Of a DNA stretch of 64,000 nucleotides, positions 1 to 15,640 are shown one piece after another (positions within the stretch are counted from its first letter, which is position 1; every line of letters begins with the position of its first letter). This DNA comes from Tubulanus polymorphus. Lineage: Eukaryota; Animalia; Nemertea. The translations under genes were made by a program, and so were the position numbers. The stretch is taken from the NCBI RefSeq assembly GCF_964204645.1, contig NC_134032.1:496001-560000 (forward strand). Direction: 5' to 3'. Below the pieces are notes generated by a model that saw only the letters and a program-made list of their open reading frames with translations, searched no databases and had not been told where the DNA came from.

Positions 1-291
1 AACAGGTTTAAGCATTTTCAAAGCTCACTTGCAAGGAGACCCTTATCAAATTACTTTGCATTTCTTAATACCAACTTAGATCAAATTACTTCTCTTAGTT
101 TCTTAGCAACATTATAATTATCATATTTTCTTACTCACAACAAACAAAACAAACCAAGTGCACCGCCACAAAGACAAGCCACTCCTTACACCACAAAGAC
201 AAGTCACCACAAAGATACATTACCTAATTGGAGTAATCAAGATAATTCAACCCACAAAGTTTAAAACAAAGTATTCACTTATATGGAAAAT

Positions 292-380
292 ACACATGTA
301 AGCCATGTTTATTTTGCACACTTCACATGTAAGCCATGTTTGTTTTGCACACTACACATGTAAGCCATGTTTGTTTGCAT
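292..380. repeat. 31-bp tandem repeat, about 3 copies
   Basis: cacatgtaagccatgttt(t/g)ttttgcacac repeated. Confidence 0.85.
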
Positions 381-583
381 AAATTTTGTCGTTTCATATA
401 AGAAGTGGTCGAATTTTTCAGACGTTATTCGTGTGAAGTTTATATTTTTGTAGAAAGGAACTAAATAGCTTTAGCTAAACAACCGATAAAGAGAGTGAAG
501 TTAGCGAAATAGAGTCGAATTGAGCAGCTCTAAAGAATAAAACTCATAAAACTCTGAACGCATCACACAAACCCATGGCTTAC

Positions 584-730
584 CCCGACACTAATATGTT
601 CCATTATAGGAATGACCGAACTGGCCCCGACTGCCTGTAAAACCCGTGGGGACCCGGTGACGGCCCCGAGAGCCGCGGACATTGACGACACGTACAAACC
701 GCACAACCACATAGGCCCGAACACGGCCAC
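584..730 (-). CDS. SLC12A8: SLC12A8 alternative exon B (duplicate TM8-region exon, 49 aa)
   Basis: 147 nt, acceptor ...ccgcTAG, donor GTAAGC, phase 0-0, no stops: [49 protein letters not shown]. Aligns without gaps to exon 5133-5279. Absent from the ORF track. Confidence 0.85.
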
Positions 731-3700
731 CTAGCGGGGTTAACATAAAACACAAACATACGTATTACAAACATAGAATTAATGGGTAAGCAGGAGTGGG
801 AGGGGTACGACAGAGCTTCTGAAATAAAATACGTGCAATATAAACGTTACGAAATCGAGGGTCGGATCTAGACGCAGGAGCATCTCAACAAATATATTCA
901 CCGCAAATCAATAAGAAACTTGCATCATTTCGGCAGTTTAACTTTTCCAACAAATGTCGAAATTGTGCCTTTTTTGAAAAAGTGCCCTTAACCCTTTCAG
1001 TGCGTCTACATCGCAGTGCAGTGTATAATTCAGTGATGGATTTTGCTAGTACACCGCGCTGCGGTGTATTGATGTAATTAGTAATTATCTCTCTTGAAAG
1101 ATGGCAGCACCTGTCAAACATAGTGAAATACTAGTAACTAACGATACACTGCACCGCGGTGTAGACGCACTATAGTGGTATTCCCGTTATTCAACACACT
1201 AGGGTGGAATTTTTCAAACTTTTCAAATTATCTCCAGCACTATAGGGTATTGATAAGTCAGCACTGAAAGGGTTTAATGAATGGTCAATCAAAATTCTAA
1301 TCGATCAAACCGAATTATCGTAATACCCCTGCTAGATCCGCCCTTAGATTTCTAAGTACATGCTATATATCAAACATCGTCCTTGAGTGATAACTTTCAG
1401 TTCAACTACTTTCTCATTCTCATCTCCCCCCGGGCATCATTTCACAGAGTTCATCCTAAGTTGTAGTTAGTAAGATCGAGTGCTGTTGCTGTTGTTAGGA
1501 TATTTACGTTTTAGATTCGTACGCAATGCGTCAGAAAAAGTCACCGCGCAGAAGTGACCGTTGACAGTTGGTGAATTGGAGGGTCGAGTTTAGATCATGT
1601 ACGTGCATGCATGTCGTGTGCGTGTGTGGATCAACAATAGCCTTCTTAATTACTCGGAGTAGTTTTTCCACATTCGGCTTTGCATTTTCATCAAACGGTA
1701 CAGCTTAGAATTAACTTAAAGAAAATTGCGCATCGTTTATCGTACCAATTGAAACGCGTTGTACGGTAGGAGTTTAAATTCTTTCCAAAACGCCGATCAT
1801 TATCCGTTTTAAAACGGAAAATAAAAGGAAAATAGACGTTCACGATGTTAAGTTAATTCTAAGCTGTACCGTAATTCTTCCAATAAAGAAATATCTCTTT
1901 TTGTCAATAATTCCACAATCTCATGAAAATAAAGTTCGCCTATTGTTTTTTCAATTTTCCTATCTATCACACATCGAAATATTTCCCTATAAAATTTGTT
2001 CTCCGAGGAATCAAAAACAGCCTTATAATGTGAAAAAATATGTGCAAGGTTATGAAAGTCGATGTTTGCATTGCTGATACGGATTTAAGAATTATGAAAG
2101 AGGGTCGGATATTCTAAGGCTGGTTCGTCACTGCTTGACAAGATATCCACTTAATAAGAGTTGATACCGGTACAAGTATAGGTTTAGAGTGGGTGAAATT
2201 GAAGGCGTGTTCATGCGCATATCTCGGTGAACAAATATCGATAAATGTCGAAAAAGATATCAATCATTTGCTTTAAAGTAGTGCTAGTATTGAAAAGGTT
2301 TGGTAATGCGTGTTTGAAGTCTAAATTCAGTATAGAGGTGTTGCGTACAGCTTTGTTTAATGTCCTGTTAGTTTATTTACACTATGTTAGTTCTGTTTTC
2401 TGGTCATTCCGCCTGATGATGACCATTGGTCCACAGATGTTGTGGTTTCGTTTTAACAAATTAAATCGTATACAATTCAAATTATGGGACTTCTTCAATT
2501 ATGTACAGTGAACACGGATTAGTGATTCATTCAACTACTAAGTTGTTGCATAGTTTGTCATGTAAATCTCGTTTGAAACCACTGATGTGGCGTAGTCACT
2601 TGGAAAAAGCTCATGACTGCAAAACTAAACTGCAAGACCTCTGAACATAAAGCATGATCTTAGCTATTGTGAATAGTAAGAAGAGTCTATACTAACTATA
2701 GGTTCAGACGAGAGAAATTCAGCAATGAATCAGTCTGAGAAAAGAGAGACTTTATTTTGAGCAATGTTTGTGAGCATCACGCCTGATGATGGGTTAAAGT
2801 GTTTAGCCGAAACGTTGCTCAAAATATAAAGTCTCTTCTATTCAAGAATTTTTTATCTCGGACTGATTGATTGCGGGATTTCTCTCGTCATCAATCTTAC
2901 ACGGATATTGTGTACCTTCTCGACATATAGGTTCAGTTACGCTTCATGCAATCGACAAGTATTCACGACCGATTTAAAATCGCTAGGTCTGAGAGTTGGT
3001 TTTTTTTTCAGACATGCTCATCAATACAAGTAACAACTGTTTCTTTAGGTCATCCTCACAAATCTCTTCGATGAATCGGTATGACTAGACTATTAAGCCG
3101 GAGGGGGGGGCCTATGTGGTTCACGTTTCGTGTCCTAGTAAAACAACGTCTAAACGTCACCACAATCTCTCGATGTATCGCCTTCGCGATGAAAACAGTT
3201 TTTTTTCACGGTGTAAAAGACTAGGTTCGTGTGAAGCTCAGTTTCGGAAATGAAGCGATTCGCGGATTGGAAACTATAACATAAAATGGTGCGAGGTGCA
3301 GGAAGCGGATTGCGGCCACATCCAAGACTTCACGAGTCAATAGTGCATATAGGGTCTCCTGAAAAAGCGATGGCGCATATTTCTACAGTCCGGGGGCTGC
3401 AGTTGCTAAAAATTTGGTTATAATTAACCGGTGGATAGTCGACATAGCGAAAATTCAAAGTTCGTTGTAACTATGTTATCTTTAACCCTTTCAGTGCATC
3501 TACACCGCAGTGCGATGTATGAATCGGTGATGGATTTCGCTAGTACACTGTACTGCAGTGTATTGATGTAATTAGTAATTATCTCTCTTGAAACATGGCA
3601 GCACCTGTCAAACACAGTGAAATACTAGTAACTAATGATACACCGCACCGCGGTGTAGACGCATTATAGTGCTATTCCTGTTATTCAACACACTAGGTTG

Positions 3701-6700
3701 AAATTTTTCAAAATTTTCAATTTATCTCAAGCACTATAGGGAATTATCAAGTCAGCAATGAAAGGGTTAATCAACTTTTGACTAACTGCAGCCCCGGAAA
3801 ATTAATCAGTGCAATTCTAATTGACATCAAGATCTTGATAATTGCTCAAGTGGACTAAATGTTGCATCACTTTGAAGCGAAGAACTGTCAGTCTATGACT
3901 CTGCAATACGGTCAGACCTTTCTCACTTCTTAAGACCTTTCTCACAACATTTGTTCAACTATACTCAGTATCTTGTCATCATCTCTAAGAATGCATGTCT
4001 TAATTACACAAACTATCGATATGAAATATGCTATTGCTGTTATCCTGGAAACCCGGTGCGATATCTAACATATCTCGAACAAAATTTGCCAAATTTGTTA
4101 ACTGTGCTTAGGAAGTAAAGACTCTCGAGTATTGGAATTGACCTCAATCAGGGTAAAGGTGGGGGATAAATAACTAATCGTACATGTATTCATAACTTCA
4201 GACAGTGACAGCGACAAATCATGCAAATTACACCCGTTTAATCTAGGGCTGATCAGAGACCGATATTCAATACTGATATTTATATCAGTGCGTTGAAATA
4301 TATCGAGCTTATGTGAAACATAGAAGATTACAACAAGATTCATATACAGTGTATTTTCAGGGATTTAAAGCCTTGATACTTCAGCAGACGCGATGCTACA
4401 GATACAAAATACACTTATGAATGCAGCCGCTTTAGAATTCCAGGGCCCGGTTTTATATACTGGTGTTACCTTTAACCCAAAGACTAACTCCCACCTTGGA
4501 TTGGAGACAACTAGTTGCCGGACAGTTTTCAGTGCATGAGAGCAACTGGCTGGATACAATCAGTGTGAGCTAGCTTACGACTGGTTAACGTCCATCTATC
4601 TCCAGTTCCACCCAGTTGCTCATGTTCTACTTTTGAGCAACTAGTTGTACTCAGTTACTGTCATATCCGTCGATGTGAGCGCTCCATAATCATCAAAACA
4701 TGGTTACAACTGACTAAAACAAAGCAGTCTATCACATGATTCGAGATGCCCTGAGAATATTTGCTAGATTACACTTCTCAGTTGCTGTTGATGTGTGCGC
4801 TATGGACTAGTGACTGGCATGAACCACGTAGTTGCTGGTTTTTATTAGATGGGTACTCGCTCACTAGCAACCAGTTGTCTCTAGTCACTTATTCGATGTA
4901 CGCTTAGCTTAATGAATTGAGTTAGCCCCGGGTTAAAGATAATACCTGTGCATAAAACCGACTCCAGGATATGGAGCATGCCGATTTTCCAGTATATATA
5001 TACGAAATTTGAACGGCTCGATTAAGCCGAATTGTCACTGACACTGTATTCGGTTACTGGGGTATATAACAAATATAAAATTGGTAACATAACGACACAG
5101 GGGGGTACAACAACGCATTCGACCCTTCTTACCCCTCGACCGAGACATTTAATTATTGGGATCGTGTTTTCGTTAGCGATGGACTGTAATATACGCGGCG
5201 AACCGTAGATGGCGCCCATAGAGGACGATATGGAACTAACGTAAAGTCCGGCAAGCCATAAATAGCCAACTATTGCCACCTGAAACATCAGACGTTAGAC
5301 ATATATTATTTTGAACTCGATTGCGGCATTTCAACATCAGAGTTGACTGACTCGAACTGCATTATGCTGGGACCAGTTGCTCAAAAGTTGGTAAAAGTTA
5401 ACACCGCATTGAAAGATTGTTCCACAAACCGAAATTTGAAATTTTATTTCATTTTCCATTTTCCAATCTCAAAATCAAACCCCTTATTTTGGTACCCGCC
5501 AGTGTGCCTGGTATAGTTTAATAGATGAAGTACTTGTATAAAGTTAACCATCAGCGATATTAACCCTAACATTGGTTAACGGACTTTTGAGCATCTAGTC
5601 CCTGCTCTACGAGGTTAGCCAGGGTGGCGCCACTTTCCGCCCATATTTACAAAACCCGTTTCCTGATTATTTCCATGTGATTACAAAAAAACTCCGCGAG
5701 GAGCGAATCAGAGAAATTACTCGGTTTAAAATGTTACAATTCATTCATTTTCCATGGAATCACATATCGATAAAGAAACAATAGCATTATTGGAATTCCC
5801 TCCAATTTTTGGCCAAATTTCCCAAGTTTTCCAGGTTTTCCAGCACAGTAGCGCCACCCTGTTAGTAGGTTACGGCATTAGCCTGCATGGTACAAGTGGT
5901 CGAATAGACCGGCAAAAGTTAAAACATAAGATTTTCGATATTTGGCAGTTAACTGGTTAAGATCTCTAGCCTTCAGGATCCAGTTCCACAACTCTGGGGA
6001 CGCAGTTGCTCAAAAGTTGAGTTAGAGTTAACCAGTGGATAGTTGTCGTAGCGACAATTAAAAGATCATTGTTATTACGATATTTATCCACCGGTTGTCT
6101 TTAACCAACTTTTGAGCAACTGCAGCCCCCCCCCCCCCCCGTAATAATCTAAACTCCAAACTCACAAGTGTGGAACTGGGTGCGCGCTATCTGCAGCATT
6201 TGAATATCGGCAGGCACACTATAAGCAGTGCCAGACAGACACTTACCTTTTGCGCGATCATGTAATCTGTTTGGAGGTACGCTTTTCCGCAAACTGATCC
6301 TAGAACCACGGTGAACGATAAGTACAAAAACGTACTGAAACGATAAACAACAATTAGCTTTCGCGTTTAAGAGCGAATTGGATATCCGAATGTCCCGACA
6401 GCTTAATGACAGCAAGAACAGGAGATCACTCCCTGGATATAAGGTTTCAAGGAGTTTTAAAGGAGGGACCGCGGAGAATCATAAAAACGCGTGTCTCACC
6501 TGACGCCGACGGCCGATAAAGTACCGACCGGAATATTACGACCCGGATTAGAGAGGTCGCCGCTCATGTTGATACCGGCGAAGACGCCGGTCGCCGTCGG
6601 GAAGAACACTCCAAACACGGTGAAAAACGATTGACCTTCCATATACGACGGTCCCGTGTTGTTATGTAGGTTAGTTATCGTGTAGCCTAGGACACCGTTT

Positions 6701-9700
6701 TCTGAAATAAATTTGGAATTACAAATATAGTGTTAAATACATCATTCGAGATATCGAAATGAAACTGTTAGTTATTTGAATATTTGAAATATGGTTAAAT
6801 CAGTAAGATCGATATGCAGTCAAATTCAGTTAAGTCATCATCGGATAAGTCACCACAAAGTCATCCCTTCGAGTCGTAAATTATCTCTCTAATTCAATTT
6901 AATAAGTGTAAGTCGTCAACTTACTGAAGTCATCTTTATTTTTCAGTCTCAACTCGTACTTCTAATTCAATTTACTAAGTCATCATTTGTACATCCTCCC
7001 TCCGCAGGGACTCGAACCTGATGACATCACTACACACAGCCACGGCACGAACCCCTGCCATACTAGACCGAGTGCGCAGCTTTGCCGCATGAAAACTTGC
7101 GGCACCAATCAGATAGCTTGTAGTATAACCGCTGAGGTAAATTTAACAGAAGAACTATAAATCGGAAAACCTTATGAAACGAGATATCTAAAATAAAACG
7201 AGATATCTGATTGGCTAACGATGACATCATCTAAGCTGCGCGTGAAGCTGCGCACTCGGTCTAGTGGAGCAGGGTTTCGTACCGTGGCGAGTCTCGATGC
7301 CATCAGGTTCGAATCCCCGCCGTGGAGGACATCATCTGATAAGTCATCTGTCATTTCAATTTTTTTGAGTCCGACTTCGTACAACATGACCATTAAGTTC
7401 GAGCAGCTGATGCGTGTATGATCGTGACTTACCGATATCCGTGTGAACGAACGAACCGACGAGAAAGTCGAGAACGGCGACGAACAATACGAATAGTAAT
7501 ATCAGCTGCAGACGTATGACCCATTTCACTCCGGCGACGTTTATACCTGCAAAAACACAAACGTTTTAAATGTATAATAATATATAAACCTGCTATTCAC
7601 GGATTAAGAACCGATAATTTATTGAATCAAATTAAAAGACACAACATTTCGATCTCAGCCTAGAGATCACTGTCCTGATTACACACCTTGCATAGTCATG
7701 ACTTAAGTCCAAAAGTGGTCGTAAATCTGAAGACTGGTCTTAAGTTGTTAAATCGAGTATAGAACAAAGTTGGTCTTAGACCAGTCTTAAATCTAAGCCA
7801 TGACTATGCAACCGGCCCCTGACGATGATCTCTAGGGTGACATCGAAACGTATTCAATTAATGATCGGTTTTTAACTCTTTGCCTGCCAGGTCTATTTTT
7901 CAGGAAATGCTGCGCTTTGCTACGATTTCCGTGTTTTTCAGAGATTCATAAAACAATATATCAATACCTCAATATCTTATCAGGCCGTTCTATCTAGCAT
8001 TTTAATGTTGGGGGAGCAACCCAGGGATAATAGGGCCAAAAAGGGGCAGTTTTTACCTCAAGTCGAAAACCGATAAAATGTATTCATCGTATATGCCCTA
8101 ACTCTTTATAACAAAATGCTTCTCAAGTTAAGGATTCTGCATTGGATATAACATCGATATTTGCAAAAAGGGCACTTTTCCCAAATTTCTGGGAAAGGGG
8201 CGACGATGTAAGGCCTGGTCTTATGCGCCCTTTTTCAAAAACATCTAAGAAGGGCAATTTCTGTGACATGAAGATACAAATTATCGGCAATTACGACAAA
8301 GAATGGCCTTTTATTCATCAATTTGCCCAAAAGATGCGTATTTGGTTGGATCATCTGATCGTGATTTGTTGGTGCATCAATAAATACTTTGGTTTTGAAT
8401 CTTCACTCATCCGATGACGGTTTAAACCAGATAGATTTGCGGAGCGTCGTTTAGTGACAACATTTCTTACCTAATAACAATAACAGAACGCCGATAGCGA
8501 TACCGCGTGATACCCATTCATTCTGCTGGTTAATCAACGCCGCGATACTTTCACCGAAACCAACTACGTACAACGAACACGCTACAGCCTGAAAATACAT
8601 ATCACAAACATTACCAGTATTTCACATTCAACTTATCGGTCTCAAATGTCGCGGCTTAGATTCAAGTCCAGTTTAAGACGACCTTAGTTCTACGACATAA
8701 GACAACTTAAAGTTCAATTTGCTTCCATAATCAATCTGACAACTGAAGACCAGTCTAAGCTTATTTAGGTTCTATAGCCAATCTGACAACTTAAAACCAG
8801 TCTTAGCTTATTTTGGTTCTATAACCAATCTAACGACTCAAGACCGCTCTAAGCTCATTTTAGTTCTATAGCCAATCTAACAACTTGAGACCAGTCTGAA
8901 GATTTAATATCACAGAACTTGAGTCACATCTGTTTGAAAGTGTTAAACACTCAGCACAAGAACAGATGGCTATAACATTAATCAATCTCGTCATCAAGAG
9001 TTTCACAAATTGTGACTATTTCTGATGAATTTCCAAAAGTCATTGAAATAATTGATTTTCGTAAAAACAAAATTATCATACATTTCAAAACTGACATACG
9101 CCAATCTATGCAATCAAAAACAAAACTAGGGGTCCAGGGACACCACACCCACTTAGGATGTTGTATCAAATGCTCAGCAAACTAACAATTCATTATTCAA
9201 CGCCCCCTGGGGGCCCAGTTTCACGAAAAAGTGTAAGCCTAAAATGGTAAAGTTTGAATTGTTGTCCTCATTGAAAACATGAAGTAACCAATAGCGACTA
9301 CACCAAAATTTTAGTTAAACTTTTTCGTGAAACTGGGCCCTGGTGACCAAATACAAAAACCGCCGGGACTAAAGTCCCAATTGGAGTAAAAACATTTATC
9401 AAAATTAAAGTCGCAATCATTCGGCATTCACGTCAAACCTATTACTCAAAAATTATTACTAAAAAAAGAATGAAAGGAAAAAGTTTTGTGTTTAGCTTAA
9501 CGTACCTGTCCGAAACAGTAGACGATACCGATTGAAGTGCCGATCTTCGCCCCGAGAACGTGAGATAACAGGAAGTAGACGCCTCCGCTTTCCATTTTAC
9601 ACCGTTCGCAAACTCCGATCGCGGAGATCACGGAGATCATCGCGACGAATATCGTCACCAGTATGATCACCAGAGATAGACCGATACCGGCGTTACCCTG

Positions 9701-12340
9701 AAATATATACATAGATTACAATAGTTTGAGACTAACTGGGAATTCACGGGAATCGCACAATTGGCAATAATGAAACATAATGATATTAGTCTTAACCCTT
9801 TCAGTGCGTCAACACCGCAGTGCGGTGTATAAATCAGTTATAGATTTTGCTAGTACACCGCACTGCGGTGTATTGATATAATTAGTAATTCTCTCTTGAA
9901 AAATGGCAGCACCTGTCAGACATAGTGAAATATAAGTAACTAACGATACATCGCACCGCGGTGTAGACGCACTATAGTGGTATTCCCGTTATTCAACACA
10001 CTAGGGTGGAATTTTCTTAAATTTTCAAATTTTCTCCAGCACGATAGGGTATTAATTAGTCAGCACTGAAAAGGTTAAAGGGCAGGCTTCAATTCTGGAA
10101 TTCTCTACTGATTGAGCAGTACTCAAAAAGCCTAGGCTAGATCCGCCCCTGGAAACCTGCCTCAAAGACGAGCTGAATATATACGTACCACCATCCAACC
10201 GGTTCGCAAGAAAATCACCACGCCGAAAATATTGAGCATACACGACGTGAAAACACCGTCCCACGTGCCGAATAAAACCGGCTCGACGATGAAGAAATTC
10301 GTTTTCCACCACGGCTTCTGAGTCAGATTCTGAAATAAAATTAAAAAATTCGTAGAAACTATTATAGTAACGCACAGGTTAACCCTTTCAGTGCATCTAC
10401 ACCGCAGTGCGGTGTATAAATCAGTGATAGATTTTGCGAGTACACCGCACTGCGGTGTATTGATTTAATTAATAATAAGTAATTATCTCTCTTGAAAAAT
10501 GGCAGCACTTGTCAAACATAGTGAAATACTAGTAACTAATGATACACTGCACCGCGGTGTAGACGCACTATAGTGGTATTCCTGTTATCAAATACACTAG
10601 GGTGCAATTTTTAAAAATTTTCAAATTATCAAATTAAAACGTGTTCTAACAGCGCCTAGCAGCGTGGATGTCCATATCCATACTGATAACTGCTTTGAAA
10701 TATATTGAGCTAACGCGAAAAATGGAAGATCACCCCGAAATCAAGCTTAGATAGTCGTCTCACCGACGGGGTATGAAACCACGCAGACTAATGATTTATA
10801 TCAGCCTTTTTCTGTTATTCTATGAATGCTTTTATGTCTAGCTTTGATCTTCCGAGGGTGTTTGGTGTTTAGTCGCTTTCTAAAGAGCACCGACTCAGAG
10901 GGTCGGGTATTACAACTAAGACTCCCATTTAAGTCGAAATCATTTTAACGACTTCACTCATCGGTATTTTAGGTATATAAAGTATACAGGGTCCCTAAGA
11001 CTCCTTGATTCCTAGGAATATGAAAGTGATGCAGACGCCAATGAGTGCTCATTTCATTAAGGTTATTGTAGGATTTGTGATGTGCCGTGCACGTGGGTAG
11101 TGCCTAATGATCGACCTAACGATGTCCCGTGCACGCGGGAGGCCATAACTTATAGAAATATAATAGCAAATATATGTAGAAATAATATGTATAGTTTTAT
11201 GAGAAAGATAAATGTCATATAGATAGACACAAGTTCGATGATTGTATAGATGATGTGATAACAGGCCGAGTACATGAGTCTCTGTTATATGATATTTTCA
11301 AACATCTGTGATGAGACATTATTAACGCATGATGTGATTGTATTATAGCACAGCCCGTATACACTGTAAATCAATTAACGTGCGTTATGTCGGAGTTTAT
11401 AAAATCATTTCGCACAATTGTCGCTGATATTAATCCGATTGAGCTGATGAGGGCGTACTGGGCCAACAACCTGACCGGGCTTAGGCTTAACAAAACTGAT
11501 ACGTTGTTTCTCGGCAGCGGGCGGATGATTTTTGTAAAATATAACAAATTTCATTTCTATAGCGGCCGGGTCTGTTATGGTAAAATTGATCACGATTTTA
11601 CTTTTAAGCTCAGCAGAGCGGAGAAACAAGGTATCGATTTTTTAGCCTTACGACAATTTTATTTACTAAACGCATATGTCAGAAGACAGATATTCCGTCA
11701 AATTCTAATGTTTGAGTAGCAGTGATTTTTGTACTTCAAGTCAAAGGTAATTCAATGGAATTGCTTACACTCTAAACATTTGGCACAAGGAATGTGGAGT
11801 GAATGGCTTTATATGAGTCTAAGTAAGGGTTAGGATTAGATTTGGGGAATTTTGGAAAGAATCTAATTGAATCTGAGAAGATATTTGGCAGTTGATATCC
11901 TGCTGCAAACTAGCGACACCTGGTGGATCCTCACTTGCCACAAGTGGAATCCTCTATCATTACAGTAGTTGATGTCCTACTGCACACTAGCGACACCTGG
12001 TGGATCATCACTTGCCACAAGCAAAATCCTCTATTGCCGCAGTAGTTAATGTCCTACTGCACACTAGCGACACCTGTTGGACGCAGTCACTACTTACCGA
12101 ATCCTCTCTGAACAGTTCATTCTCGTTGCCCTTATCGTGATGATACGGGCTATCTGAGTAAGCGTCCGGAGACTGCGGAACTCCTTCATTCTCCGCCTCG
12201 TTCCGCTGTTCTACGCTCAGTCCGTACCGACTCCAGTCCGGAGTCGACTTCACGTCCTTTTTGTTCGTAGTGGTCATGATTAATAACGGACTACGTTCTC
12301 CGCTGTTAGTCCAGCTGTTAGTCCATTGCGGTTCGTCCAT
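584..12340 (-). CDS. SLC12A8: Solute carrier family 12 member 8 (cation-chloride cotransporter family), 5' portion; continues beyond the left edge
   Basis: Phase-consistent GT-AG exons: 12340-12098 (MDEPQW...LFREDS), 10329-10189 ([47 protein letters not shown]), 9697-9506 (GNAGIG...[14 protein letters not shown]...YCFGQ), 8588-8471, 7546-7433 ([14 protein letters not shown]), 6701-6500 ([28 protein letters not shown]), 6334-6247, then 5279-5133 and/or 730-584. The PWW...[16 protein letters not shown] motif is characteristic of SLC12A8. Confidence 0.93.
988..1277. mobile_element. piggyBac-like MITE, ~285 bp (family A)
   Basis: Ends TTAAccctttcagtgc ... gcactgaaagggtTTAA. Near-identical copies at 3482-3770, 9792-10078, 10379-10630, 36181-36465; partial copies at 32748-32897 and 35195-35318. 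TTAA flanks with CCC...GGG termini are typical of piggyBac. Confidence 0.85.
2771..2821 (+). ncRNA. Minimal type-I hammerhead ribozyme motif (Penelope/retrozyme type) inside a foldback
   Basis: gc-CTGATGA-tg-ggttaaa(gtg)tttagcc-GAAA-cg-TT-gctca, embedded in imperfect inverted repeat 2707-2890. Confidence 0.65.
3393..3795. mobile_element. Palindromic MITE (ggggctgcagttgct...actgcagcccc) with a family-A MITE nested at 3482-3770
   Basis: Same family at ~5373-5600, 6003-6125, 59270-59397 and 63315-63440. The nested copy is bounded by TTAA. Confidence 0.75.
5133..5279 (-). CDS. SLC12A8: SLC12A8 exon A (canonical-like TM8-region exon, 49 aa)
   Basis: 147 nt, acceptor tttCAG, donor GTAAGA, phase 0-0: [49 protein letters not shown]. 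Confidence 0.92.
6995..7330. mobile_element. Two tRNA-derived SINE-like copies in inverted orientation
   Basis: B-box-like GGTTCGAATCCC at ~7306-7317 (+) and the reverse complement at ~7007-7019; shared body sequence; related copy at ~34860-35010. Confidence 0.6.
7598..7876. mobile_element. Inverted pair of hammerhead-bearing repeat units separated by a MITE
   Basis: + strand CTGACGA-t-gat...atc-GAAA-cg-TA at 7819-7852. The - strand counterpart at 7641-7674 keeps stem II and GAAAtgTT but has lost its CTGAnGA box. Palindromic MITE at ~7689-7818. Confidence 0.6.
9792..10078. mobile_element. piggyBac-like MITE family A
   Basis: TTAA-flanked full copy. Confidence 0.85.
10379..10630. mobile_element. 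piggyBac-like MITE family A, 3' truncated
   Basis: Matches 988-1277 for ~250 bp. Confidence 0.8.
11482..11648. mobile_element. MITE family B (TIR aggcta...gataccttgtttctcc)
   Basis: Related copies at 16415-16638, 47418-47748 and 56226-56442. Confidence 0.75.
11885..12082. repeat. 77-bp tandem repeat (~2.6 copies), each with a CTCF-like motif
   Basis: ctagcgacacctg(g/t)tgg at 11910, 11987 and 12064; reverse complement CCA(C/A)CAGGTGTCGCTAG. Confidence 0.75.
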
Positions 12341-12463
12341 GTTTCGCACTGGATGAAGCGGTCCGCTTCACGCCGAACATCGTGGACACTTTAACGACTA
12401 CAAAATACAGAAATACAAAACTGATTCATTTCACTGGAAACAAACAAACAAATCTGTACTATC

Positions 12464-14867: not shown

Positions 14868-15640
14868 CGATGACTTTTCTGATATAGTCGAAACGTTGAA
14901 TAAACTACACTAGCTCAAGGAAACATTTCAGACTCTTTTTATTCTTAGTGTGCAGGGATTTTATATTATCTTTACAACACGGACTCAGAGTGTTTCATCA
15001 ATGGTTATAATGAGGACAACATCAGTATTCCTGAAGATGACTATTAGGATATAGTGGAAACGTTGAATAAACTACACTAGCTCAAGGAAACATTTCAGAC
15101 TCTTTTTATTCTTAGTGTGCAGGGATTTTATAATATCTTTACAACACGGACTCAGAGTGTTTCATCAATGGTTATAATGAGGACAACATCAGTATTCCTG
15201 AAGATGACTATTAGGATATAGTCGAAACGTTGAATAAACTACACTAGCTCAAGGAAACATTTCAGACTCTTTTTATTCTTAGTGTGCAGGGATTTTATAT
15301 TATCTTTACAACACGGACTCAGAGTGTTTCATCAATGGTTATAATGAGGACAACATCAGTAATCCTGAAGATGACTATTAGGATATAGGGAAACGTTGAA
15401 TAAACTACACTAGCTCAAGGAAACATTTCAGACTCTTTTTATTCTTAGTGTGCAGGGATTTTATATTATCTTTACAACACGGACTCAGAGTGTTTCATCA
15501 ATGGTTATAATGAGGACAACATCAGTATTCCTGAAGATGACTATTAGGATATAGTCGAAACGTTGAATAAACTACACTAGCTCAAGGAAACATTTCAGGG
15601 ATTTTATATCATCTTTAGCCCTACAACACGTACTCGGGGT
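14868..15640 (+). mobile_element. 167-bp tandem array, each unit with a minimal hammerhead ribozyme (non-LTR retrozyme-like / Penelope-derived)
   Basis: CTGAAGA at 15031, 15198, 15365 and 15531 (period 167/167/166). Motif tattc-CTGAAGA-t-gactat(taggat)atagtc-GAAA-cg-TT-gaata, with stem I tattc/gaata. Intact in the units at 15198 and 15531. Confidence 0.85.

What the first reader, a model, noticed from the sequence alone, without database searches (positions are those of the whole stretch)
584..5279. SLC12A8 has two homologous intact TM8 exons: candidate mutually exclusive splicing switch
Seen: exon A (5133-5279) and exon B (584-730) are both 147 nt, phase 0-0, stop-free and canonically bounded. 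They align without gaps ([34 protein letters not shown]... vs [34 protein letters not shown]...). DNA is strongly diverged while GLYVSS, GA..GSPR.LQ and IPI are kept, which points to an old duplication under purifying selection. No other SLC12 exon lies between them. Known: this segment covers TM8 of the LeuT-fold CCC transporters, which lines the ion/substrate pathway; NKCC2 tunes ion affinity with mutually exclusive exons, but in TM2. Inference: B replaces SSSMGAIYG with SAALGAVTG, closer to the KCC (LTGAPR) and NKCC (SSAL) TM8 pattern, so one gene may encode two transporters with different specificity. I do not know of a described TM8 switch in SLC12A8.
Basis: partly seen in the sequence, partly recalled or inferred. 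Interest (0 to 1): 0.88.

Follow-up and report, generated by a model that had tools for sequence, protein, structure and literature searches.

The report
Ancient swappable helix exon in SLC12A8
Ribbon worms and several segmented worms keep two versions of the exon for the sodium-site helix of the poorly understood transporter SLC12A8, so one gene can probably make two transporters, a natural tool for asking what this protein carries and whether it needs sodium.

Summary
Observation confirmed. The window is the single SLC12A8 gene of the ribbon worm Tubulanus polymorphus; exons A and B (147 nt, phase 0, AG/GT, 24/49 aa identical) lie between exon 7 and one downstream exon, so B is no paralogue fragment. 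The A-then-B pair is intact in Lineus, Owenia (B unannotated), Dimorphilus and two unnamed animals; chiton, snail, Lingula and a hemichordate have A only; three Macrostomum genes carry a B-like helix alone. B is under purifying selection (Tubulanus-Lineus pS 0.82, pN 0.30). Databases list equal-length A-only and B-only proteins for Lineus and Dimorphilus, but for Tubulanus only A-only and A+B; no RNA could be laid, so strict exclusivity here is unshown. The exon holds the NKCC1 Na+-site serines S613/S614: B keeps the first, mostly loses the second (6 of 7 B exons), and always loses a Tyr invariant in 144 A-type proteins. Best reading: an old exon switch giving a second transporter with altered Na+ coupling or inner pocket (function inferred). 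Known kind (NKCC2, coq-2), not found described for SLC12A8. No earlier scan note on SLC12A8.

The parts
12098..12340 (-). SLC12A8 first coding exon (ATG at 12340; an out-of-frame ATG at 12380 opens a short upstream ORF)
   Evidence: the A-only frame equals RefSeq XP_074656365.1 exactly
10189..10329 (-). coding exon 2 (TM1, with the TM1 half of the Na+ site)
9506..9697 (-). coding exon 3
8471..8588 (-). coding exon 4
7433..7546 (-). coding exon 5
6500..6701 (-). coding exon 6 (TM6)
6247..6334 (-). coding exon 7, common upstream exon; donor at 6247
5133..5279 (-). exon A: canonical TM8 exon (residues 367-415), orthologous to the single exon of other animals; Ser-Ser at the NKCC1 613/614 positions, Tyr at 620
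731..5132 (-). A-B intron, 4402 nt, GT-AG, rich in small inverted-repeat elements; too long for steric exclusion; no element shared with the other species found
733..815 (-). 83-nt AG-free zone before the B acceptor (longest of the three introns here, also in Lineus and Owenia, not in Dimorphilus); weak hint of a regulated acceptor
584..730 (-). exon B: alternative TM8 exon; Ser-Ala at 613/614, Thr at 620; two differences seen in another DNA sample are both synonymous
1..583 (-). start of the B-to-exon-9 intron (1406 nt); exons 9-13 lie left of the window at G000:C8:495177 down to 493041

Best explanation
The TM8 exon of SLC12A8 was duplicated in tandem long ago, before Tubulanus and Lineus split and probably before nemerteans and annelids split. 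Exon A keeps the canonical helix. Exon B is a second, selected version that is spliced in place of A and gives a transporter of the same length and fold with a remodelled TM8: the second Na+-site serine is usually replaced by a small non-hydroxyl residue and a Tyr and Cys that are near-invariant in A are lost. Most likely effect: weaker or lost Na+ coupling and/or a wider inner pocket, hence different substrate, direction or driving ion in a subset of tissues. Shown: duplication, conservation in six loci, intact frames and splice sites, purifying selection, position relative to the NKCC1 Na+ site. Taken from database annotation: B-for-A splicing in Lineus and Dimorphilus. Inferred: B-only mRNA in Tubulanus, A+B mRNA as leaky by-product, and every functional consequence (about 0.4 for Na+ coupling specifically).
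For: A-then-B pair with AG/GT borders and frame-preserving length in Lineus, Dimorphilus, Owenia (B 153 nt) and two metagenome contigs (B 144 nt); a lone B exon with the same borders in a Tara contig. Lineus X1/X2 (708/708 aa) and Dimorphilus CDS60/61 (674/674 aa) differ only within this exon. Tubulanus B vs Lineus B 32/49 identical, like constitutive exon 7 (67%); pS 0.82, pN 0.30. All A exons group apart from all B exons, 98/97; Tubulanus A+B as sisters rejected, p-AU 0.003. Exon positions 15/18/19 equal NKCC1 A610/S613/S614, the Na+ ligands; mutating S613 or S614 leaves under 10% activity (PMC7889885); KCCs lack Na+ binding through Gly-Ala there (10.1101/2021.11.11.468215). Of 144 A-type proteins: position 19 Ser 133, position 20 Ala 0, position 25 Tyr 144. 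Lineus B isoform folds with pLDDT about 86-89 over the exon and matches NKCC1. Three Macrostomum SLC12A8 genes use a B-like TM8 as their only TM8.
Against: No B-only model among the three Tubulanus RefSeq proteins, two of which contain A and B. No junction read seen: X1-X3 behaved as DNA, X5 laid nothing. No exclusion device found: lengths divisible by 3, major-class splice sites, long intron, no shared docker/selector. B evolves faster than A (pN 0.30 vs 0.12). The serine change is not universal (kept in L019 and one Macrostomum gene) and six single-exon mollusc proteins have Ala there too. The fold model leans on an A-type alignment. Na+ use of invertebrate SLC12A8 has not been measured.
Confidence: 0.62

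Rival explanations
1. In Tubulanus B is no longer a replacement but an add-on cassette after A: A+B mRNA yields an A-type transporter with a 49-residue insert in the TM8-TM9 cytosolic loop, or a misfolded product, serving as a regulatory or off switch.
For: RefSeq X1 and X2 contain both exons, no B-only model; A+B is in frame; in the A+B model A fills TM8 (pLDDT about 90) and residues 416-465 loop out below pLDDT 50.
Against: Tubulanus B still conserves the TM8 residues shared with Lineus B, which is annotated as a replacement; two tandem membrane helices should invert all later helices (PMC5740500); the model's loop-out reflects missing alignment depth for the insert.
Confidence: 0.2
2. The pair is functional but arose more than once (nemerteans, annelids, flatworms), with convergent loss of the same residues, as argued for mrp-1. 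This concerns history only and is compatible with the switch.
For: Independent duplication in Owenia, Dimorphilus or annelids as a whole is not rejected (p-AU 0.105, 0.179, 0.053); B branches are long, 49 columns only; absent in Lingula, two molluscs and three unnamed animals; precedent in PMC7434440.
Against: Same order and borders everywhere; shared B residues (Ala20, Ala33, Val30) absent or rare in A; B side of the tree 98/97.
Confidence: 0.25
3. B is a slowly decaying, rarely spliced leftover with no role.
For: Faster evolution than A; no expression seen here; L016 and L019 B exons are quite diverged.
Against: Open frame and splice sites in every copy seen with saturated synonymous sites; only synonymous differences in another sample; annotated as coding in three species.
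Confidence: 0.05
4. B belongs to a separate paralogue fragment or is an assembly duplication.
For: Such an artefact exists elsewhere: a nematode protein with two identical TM8 copies (P0001).
Against: One set of downstream exons; A and B only 54% identical in DNA; both present in independent DNA runs; same layout in five other loci.
Confidence: 0.01

Closest known systems
SLC12A8 / CCC9 (orphan cation-chloride cotransporter relative)
   Same: The gene is SLC12A8: A-only frame equals RefSeq XP_074656365.1; PF00324; short C-terminus with the family's terminal motif.
   Different: Other animals tested have one TM8 exon; no description of a TM8 exon switch found in the searchable literature (most subscription papers are not searchable).
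NKCC2 (SLC12A1) A/B/F alternative exons
   Same: Same family; alternative homologous exons change a membrane helix and ion kinetics (PMC4301019).
   Different: NKCC2 swaps TM2/ICL1 in vertebrates; here TM8, which itself supplies Na+ ligands, in worms; two exons, not three; function untested.
coq-2 exons 6a/6e and mrp-1 mutually exclusive exons of helminths, annelids and molluscs
   Same: Equal-length duplicated exon, one ancestral and one lineage-restricted, with a few invariant changed residues in the protein core (PMC7434440).
   Different: Unrelated proteins; coq-2e has proven substrate switching and RNA support; here molluscs tested lack B and an A+B form is annotated.
KCC versus NKCC Na+-site substitution
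   Same: Change at the S613/S614 positions of TM8.
   Different: KCCs lose both serines by gene duplication; B loses usually one, by splicing; B is not KCC-like over the whole exon.

Membership tests
SLC12A8 / CCC9 | Full-length similarity and orthology to SLC12A8 | tested here: met
   54% to Lymnaea SLC12A8 over 716 aa; identical to the RefSeq SLC12A8-like X3; groups with protostome SLC12A8
SLC12A8 / CCC9 | CCC LeuT-fold membrane domain | tested here: met
   NKCC1 E 2e-71 by sequence; Foldseek of the Lineus B isoform to NKCC1 E 5e-25
SLC12A8 / CCC9 | Substrate and Na+ dependence | not testable with these tools
   Disputed even in mammals: NMN with Na+ (PMC11772665), polyamines questioned (PMC11310933)
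Duplication-derived mutually exclusive exons | Neighbouring homologous exons, like length, same phase, canonical borders | tested here: met
Duplication-derived mutually exclusive exons | Each exon alone gives an open frame for the same structural element | tested here: met
   714 aa each; both align ungapped to NKCC1 599-644
Duplication-derived mutually exclusive exons | Transcripts with each exon alone | tested here: inconclusive
   Annotated for Lineus and Dimorphilus, read support not seen; B-only not annotated in Tubulanus; no RNA laid
Duplication-derived mutually exclusive exons | Exons never (or rarely) joined to each other | tested here: inconclusive
   A+B models exist for Tubulanus only; their abundance is unknown
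Duplication-derived mutually exclusive exons | A known exclusion device (steric, U2/U12, frameshift-NMD, docker/selector) | tested here: not met
   Introns 396-4402 nt, all GT-AG, lengths divisible by 3, no shared pairing element; most human clusters also lack one (PMC5740500)
Duplication-derived mutually exclusive exons | Purifying selection on both exons | tested here: met
   pS/pN 0.73/0.12 for A, 0.82/0.30 for B
KCC-type Na+-independent TM8 | Gly-Ala at the NKCC1 613/614 positions | tested here: not met
   B has Ser-Ala: the first serine is kept in all B exons

The most novel reading that the evidence does not exclude
A splice switch as old as the spiralian worms toggles SLC12A8 between a Na+-coupled and a Na+-uncoupled (or different-substrate) transporter, doing by splicing what the NKCC/KCC split did by gene duplication; Macrostomum fixed the B state in intron-poor genes, and molluscs and brachiopods lost it.
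Probability: 0.25. Interest if true: 0.82.

Novelty: new variant of a known kind. Interest (0 to 1): 0.62.

Why it matters
SLC12A8 is the orphan of its family: NMN, polyamines and amino acids have been proposed and disputed, and no solved structure turned up. An evolution-tested pair of proteins that differ only in the Na+-site helix points at the residues that matter (second site serine, the Cys and the invariant Tyr one and six places later) and gives a clean A-versus-B assay for ion coupling and substrate. It also adds a deep-time case of transporter tuning by exon choice in marine worms, partly missed or mis-joined by current gene annotation (Owenia B unannotated, Tubulanus A+B).

Tried and rejected
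Word-based search with exon B alone found nothing; metagenome scan with B alone found nothing. The top two-stretch hit P0001 is a nematode model with two identical copies, not a second case. Length differences among echinoderm isoforms are alternative C-terminal exons, not TM8. Conserved intron motifs or docker/selector pairing: none beyond mobile inverted repeats. 'B is KCC-like overall': rejected by the exon A control. NKCC1 gate pair R358-D632: exon position 37 changes (Glu/Gln to mostly Ser) but the Arg partner is Glu in SLC12A8, so no claim is made. Exons were joined only in local scripts, for frame checks and comparison with fetched sequences.
Full report
Observation. Exons A (5133-5279) and B (584-730) are on the minus strand as described: 147 nt, stop-free, phase 0-0, AG/GT borders. 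They share 24 of 49 residues and 80 of 147 bases, with third codon positions near chance (18/49) and 16 of 24 shared residues on different codons. In the 268-Mb genome exon A finds only B (E 7.7e-10). The flank left of the window holds one set of exons 9-13, and there is no third copy. Frames with A only or B only are both 714 aa and open; A+B (763 aa) and neither (665 aa) are also in frame.

Identity. A protein search returned SLC12A8-like models of Tubulanus polymorphus on a contig of 16,677,571 bases, the length of the window's contig. The A-only frame equals RefSeq X3 and the A+B frame equals X1; X2 is X1 less one residue at the last acceptor; no B-only protein is in the cluster. So in this species annotation includes B, but joined behind A. 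I could not see the reads behind these models. The one read-laying run gave DNA contigs for X1-X3 and nothing for the presumed RNA run. The two differences in B and the one listed in A in those samples are synonymous.

Comparative evidence. The same A-then-B layout, with canonical borders and frame-preserving length, is in Lineus longissimus, Dimorphilus gyrociliatus and Owenia fusiformis, where B (153 nt) is not in the one protein on record, and in two unnamed animal contigs, L016 and L019 (144 nt). A Tara Oceans contig carries a B exon with the same borders, 62% identical over the match. Lineus X1/X2 and Dimorphilus CDS60/61 are equal-length protein pairs that differ only inside this exon, the pattern expected of mutually exclusive splicing. 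Lymnaea, the chiton Liolophura, Lingula, Ptychodera and three unnamed animals have A only between the flanking exons. Three Macrostomum lignano SLC12A8 genes have a B-like TM8 as their only TM8; in the one locus read it sits inside a long intron-free stretch with no A copy. Whether Macrostomum also has an A-type gene was not tested.

Age and selection. Tubulanus B and Lineus B are 65% identical, as much as constitutive exon 7, with saturated synonymous sites (pS 0.82, pN 0.30; A: 0.73, 0.12). On a 49-column tree all A exons from coral to insects separate from all B exons at 98/97; a Tubulanus-specific duplication is rejected (p-AU 0.003), separate annelid or nemertean origins are not (0.05-0.18). 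B branches are long, so one origin is favoured, not shown. That nemerteans and annelids split over 500 million years ago is my own background knowledge.

What changes. Both exons align without gaps to human NKCC1 599-644, so exon positions 15, 18 and 19 are A610, S613 and S614, the TM8 ligands of the Na+ site; mutating either serine cuts flux below 10% (PMC7889885), and KCCs lack Na+ binding through Gly-Ala there (10.1101/2021.11.11.468215). Among 144 A-type invertebrate proteins (counts of sequences, not lineages) position 18 is always Ser, 19 is Ser in 133, 20 is Cys/Ser/Thr, 25 is always Tyr. All B exons keep Ser18; six of seven replace Ser19 (Ala, Gly, Val), as do two of three Macrostomum genes; nearly all have Ala20; none has Tyr25. 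Six single-exon mollusc proteins also have Ala19, so that change alone is neither B-specific nor lethal; the Tyr and Cys losses are the sharper marks. Over the whole exon B is not more KCC-like than A. The Lineus B protein models confidently across the exon and matches NKCC1; in the A+B model A takes the TM8 slot and B loops out at low confidence. Both models are steered by an alignment made mostly of A-type rows.

Mechanism. Most likely B replaces A in some cells and yields a second transporter with weaker Na+ coupling or a reshaped inner pocket; A+B mRNA would be a leak that escapes decay because it is in frame. No exclusion device was found (introns 396-4402 nt, major-class sites, no shared pairing elements; a longer AG-free zone before B in three of four species), which is also the case for most human clusters, and two tandem membrane-helix exons are expected to be exclusive at the protein level (PMC5740500). 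The main rival is that Tubulanus uses B as an add-on.

Comparison and verdict. The design is that of NKCC2 A/B/F (TM2; PMC4301019) and of coq-2 and mrp-1 in worms and molluscs (PMC7434440). I found no description for SLC12A8, though two of the isoform pairs sit unremarked in databases. SLC12A8's substrate and Na+ need are disputed, so a conserved natural swap of the Na+-site helix is useful. New variant of a known kind; interest 0.62. Database searches were run exon by exon or with tool-returned protein ids; the joined models stayed in local scripts.

Noticed in passing
L014:18037-19699 (chiton Liolophura SLC12A8 locus): About 12 tandem ~134-bp copies each carrying most of one late coding exon (residues 606-638); tandem repeat over an exon or assembly artefact.
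   Followed up: no
P0120/P0202, P0123/P0203, P0212/P0214, P0219/P0222, P0133/P0134: Echinoderm SLC12A8 isoforms from five classes or genera differ by alternative C-terminal exons, a second conserved splice choice in this gene.
   Followed up: partly
L008:5001-7137: Macrostomum lignano SLC12A8 gene nearly without introns and with a B-like TM8 only, named 'member 9' by UniRef; possible processed copy of a B-type mRNA.
   Followed up: partly
window 14869-15598: Young 167-bp tandem array, 4.4 copies, 97% alike, upstream of the gene; another note calls it hammerhead-containing, not checked.
   Followed up: no
window 12318-12380, minus strand: Short out-of-frame upstream ORF that overlaps the SLC12A8 start codon.
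   Followed up: no
window 988-1274, 3482-3760, 9790-10075, 10380-10625: Copies of a very abundant ~280-bp element with inverted ends in the introns (very high depth).
   Followed up: no
L006:12222-15272: Nematode SLC12A8 model P0001 has two identical TM6-TM8 blocks, probably an assembly duplication.
   Followed up: partly
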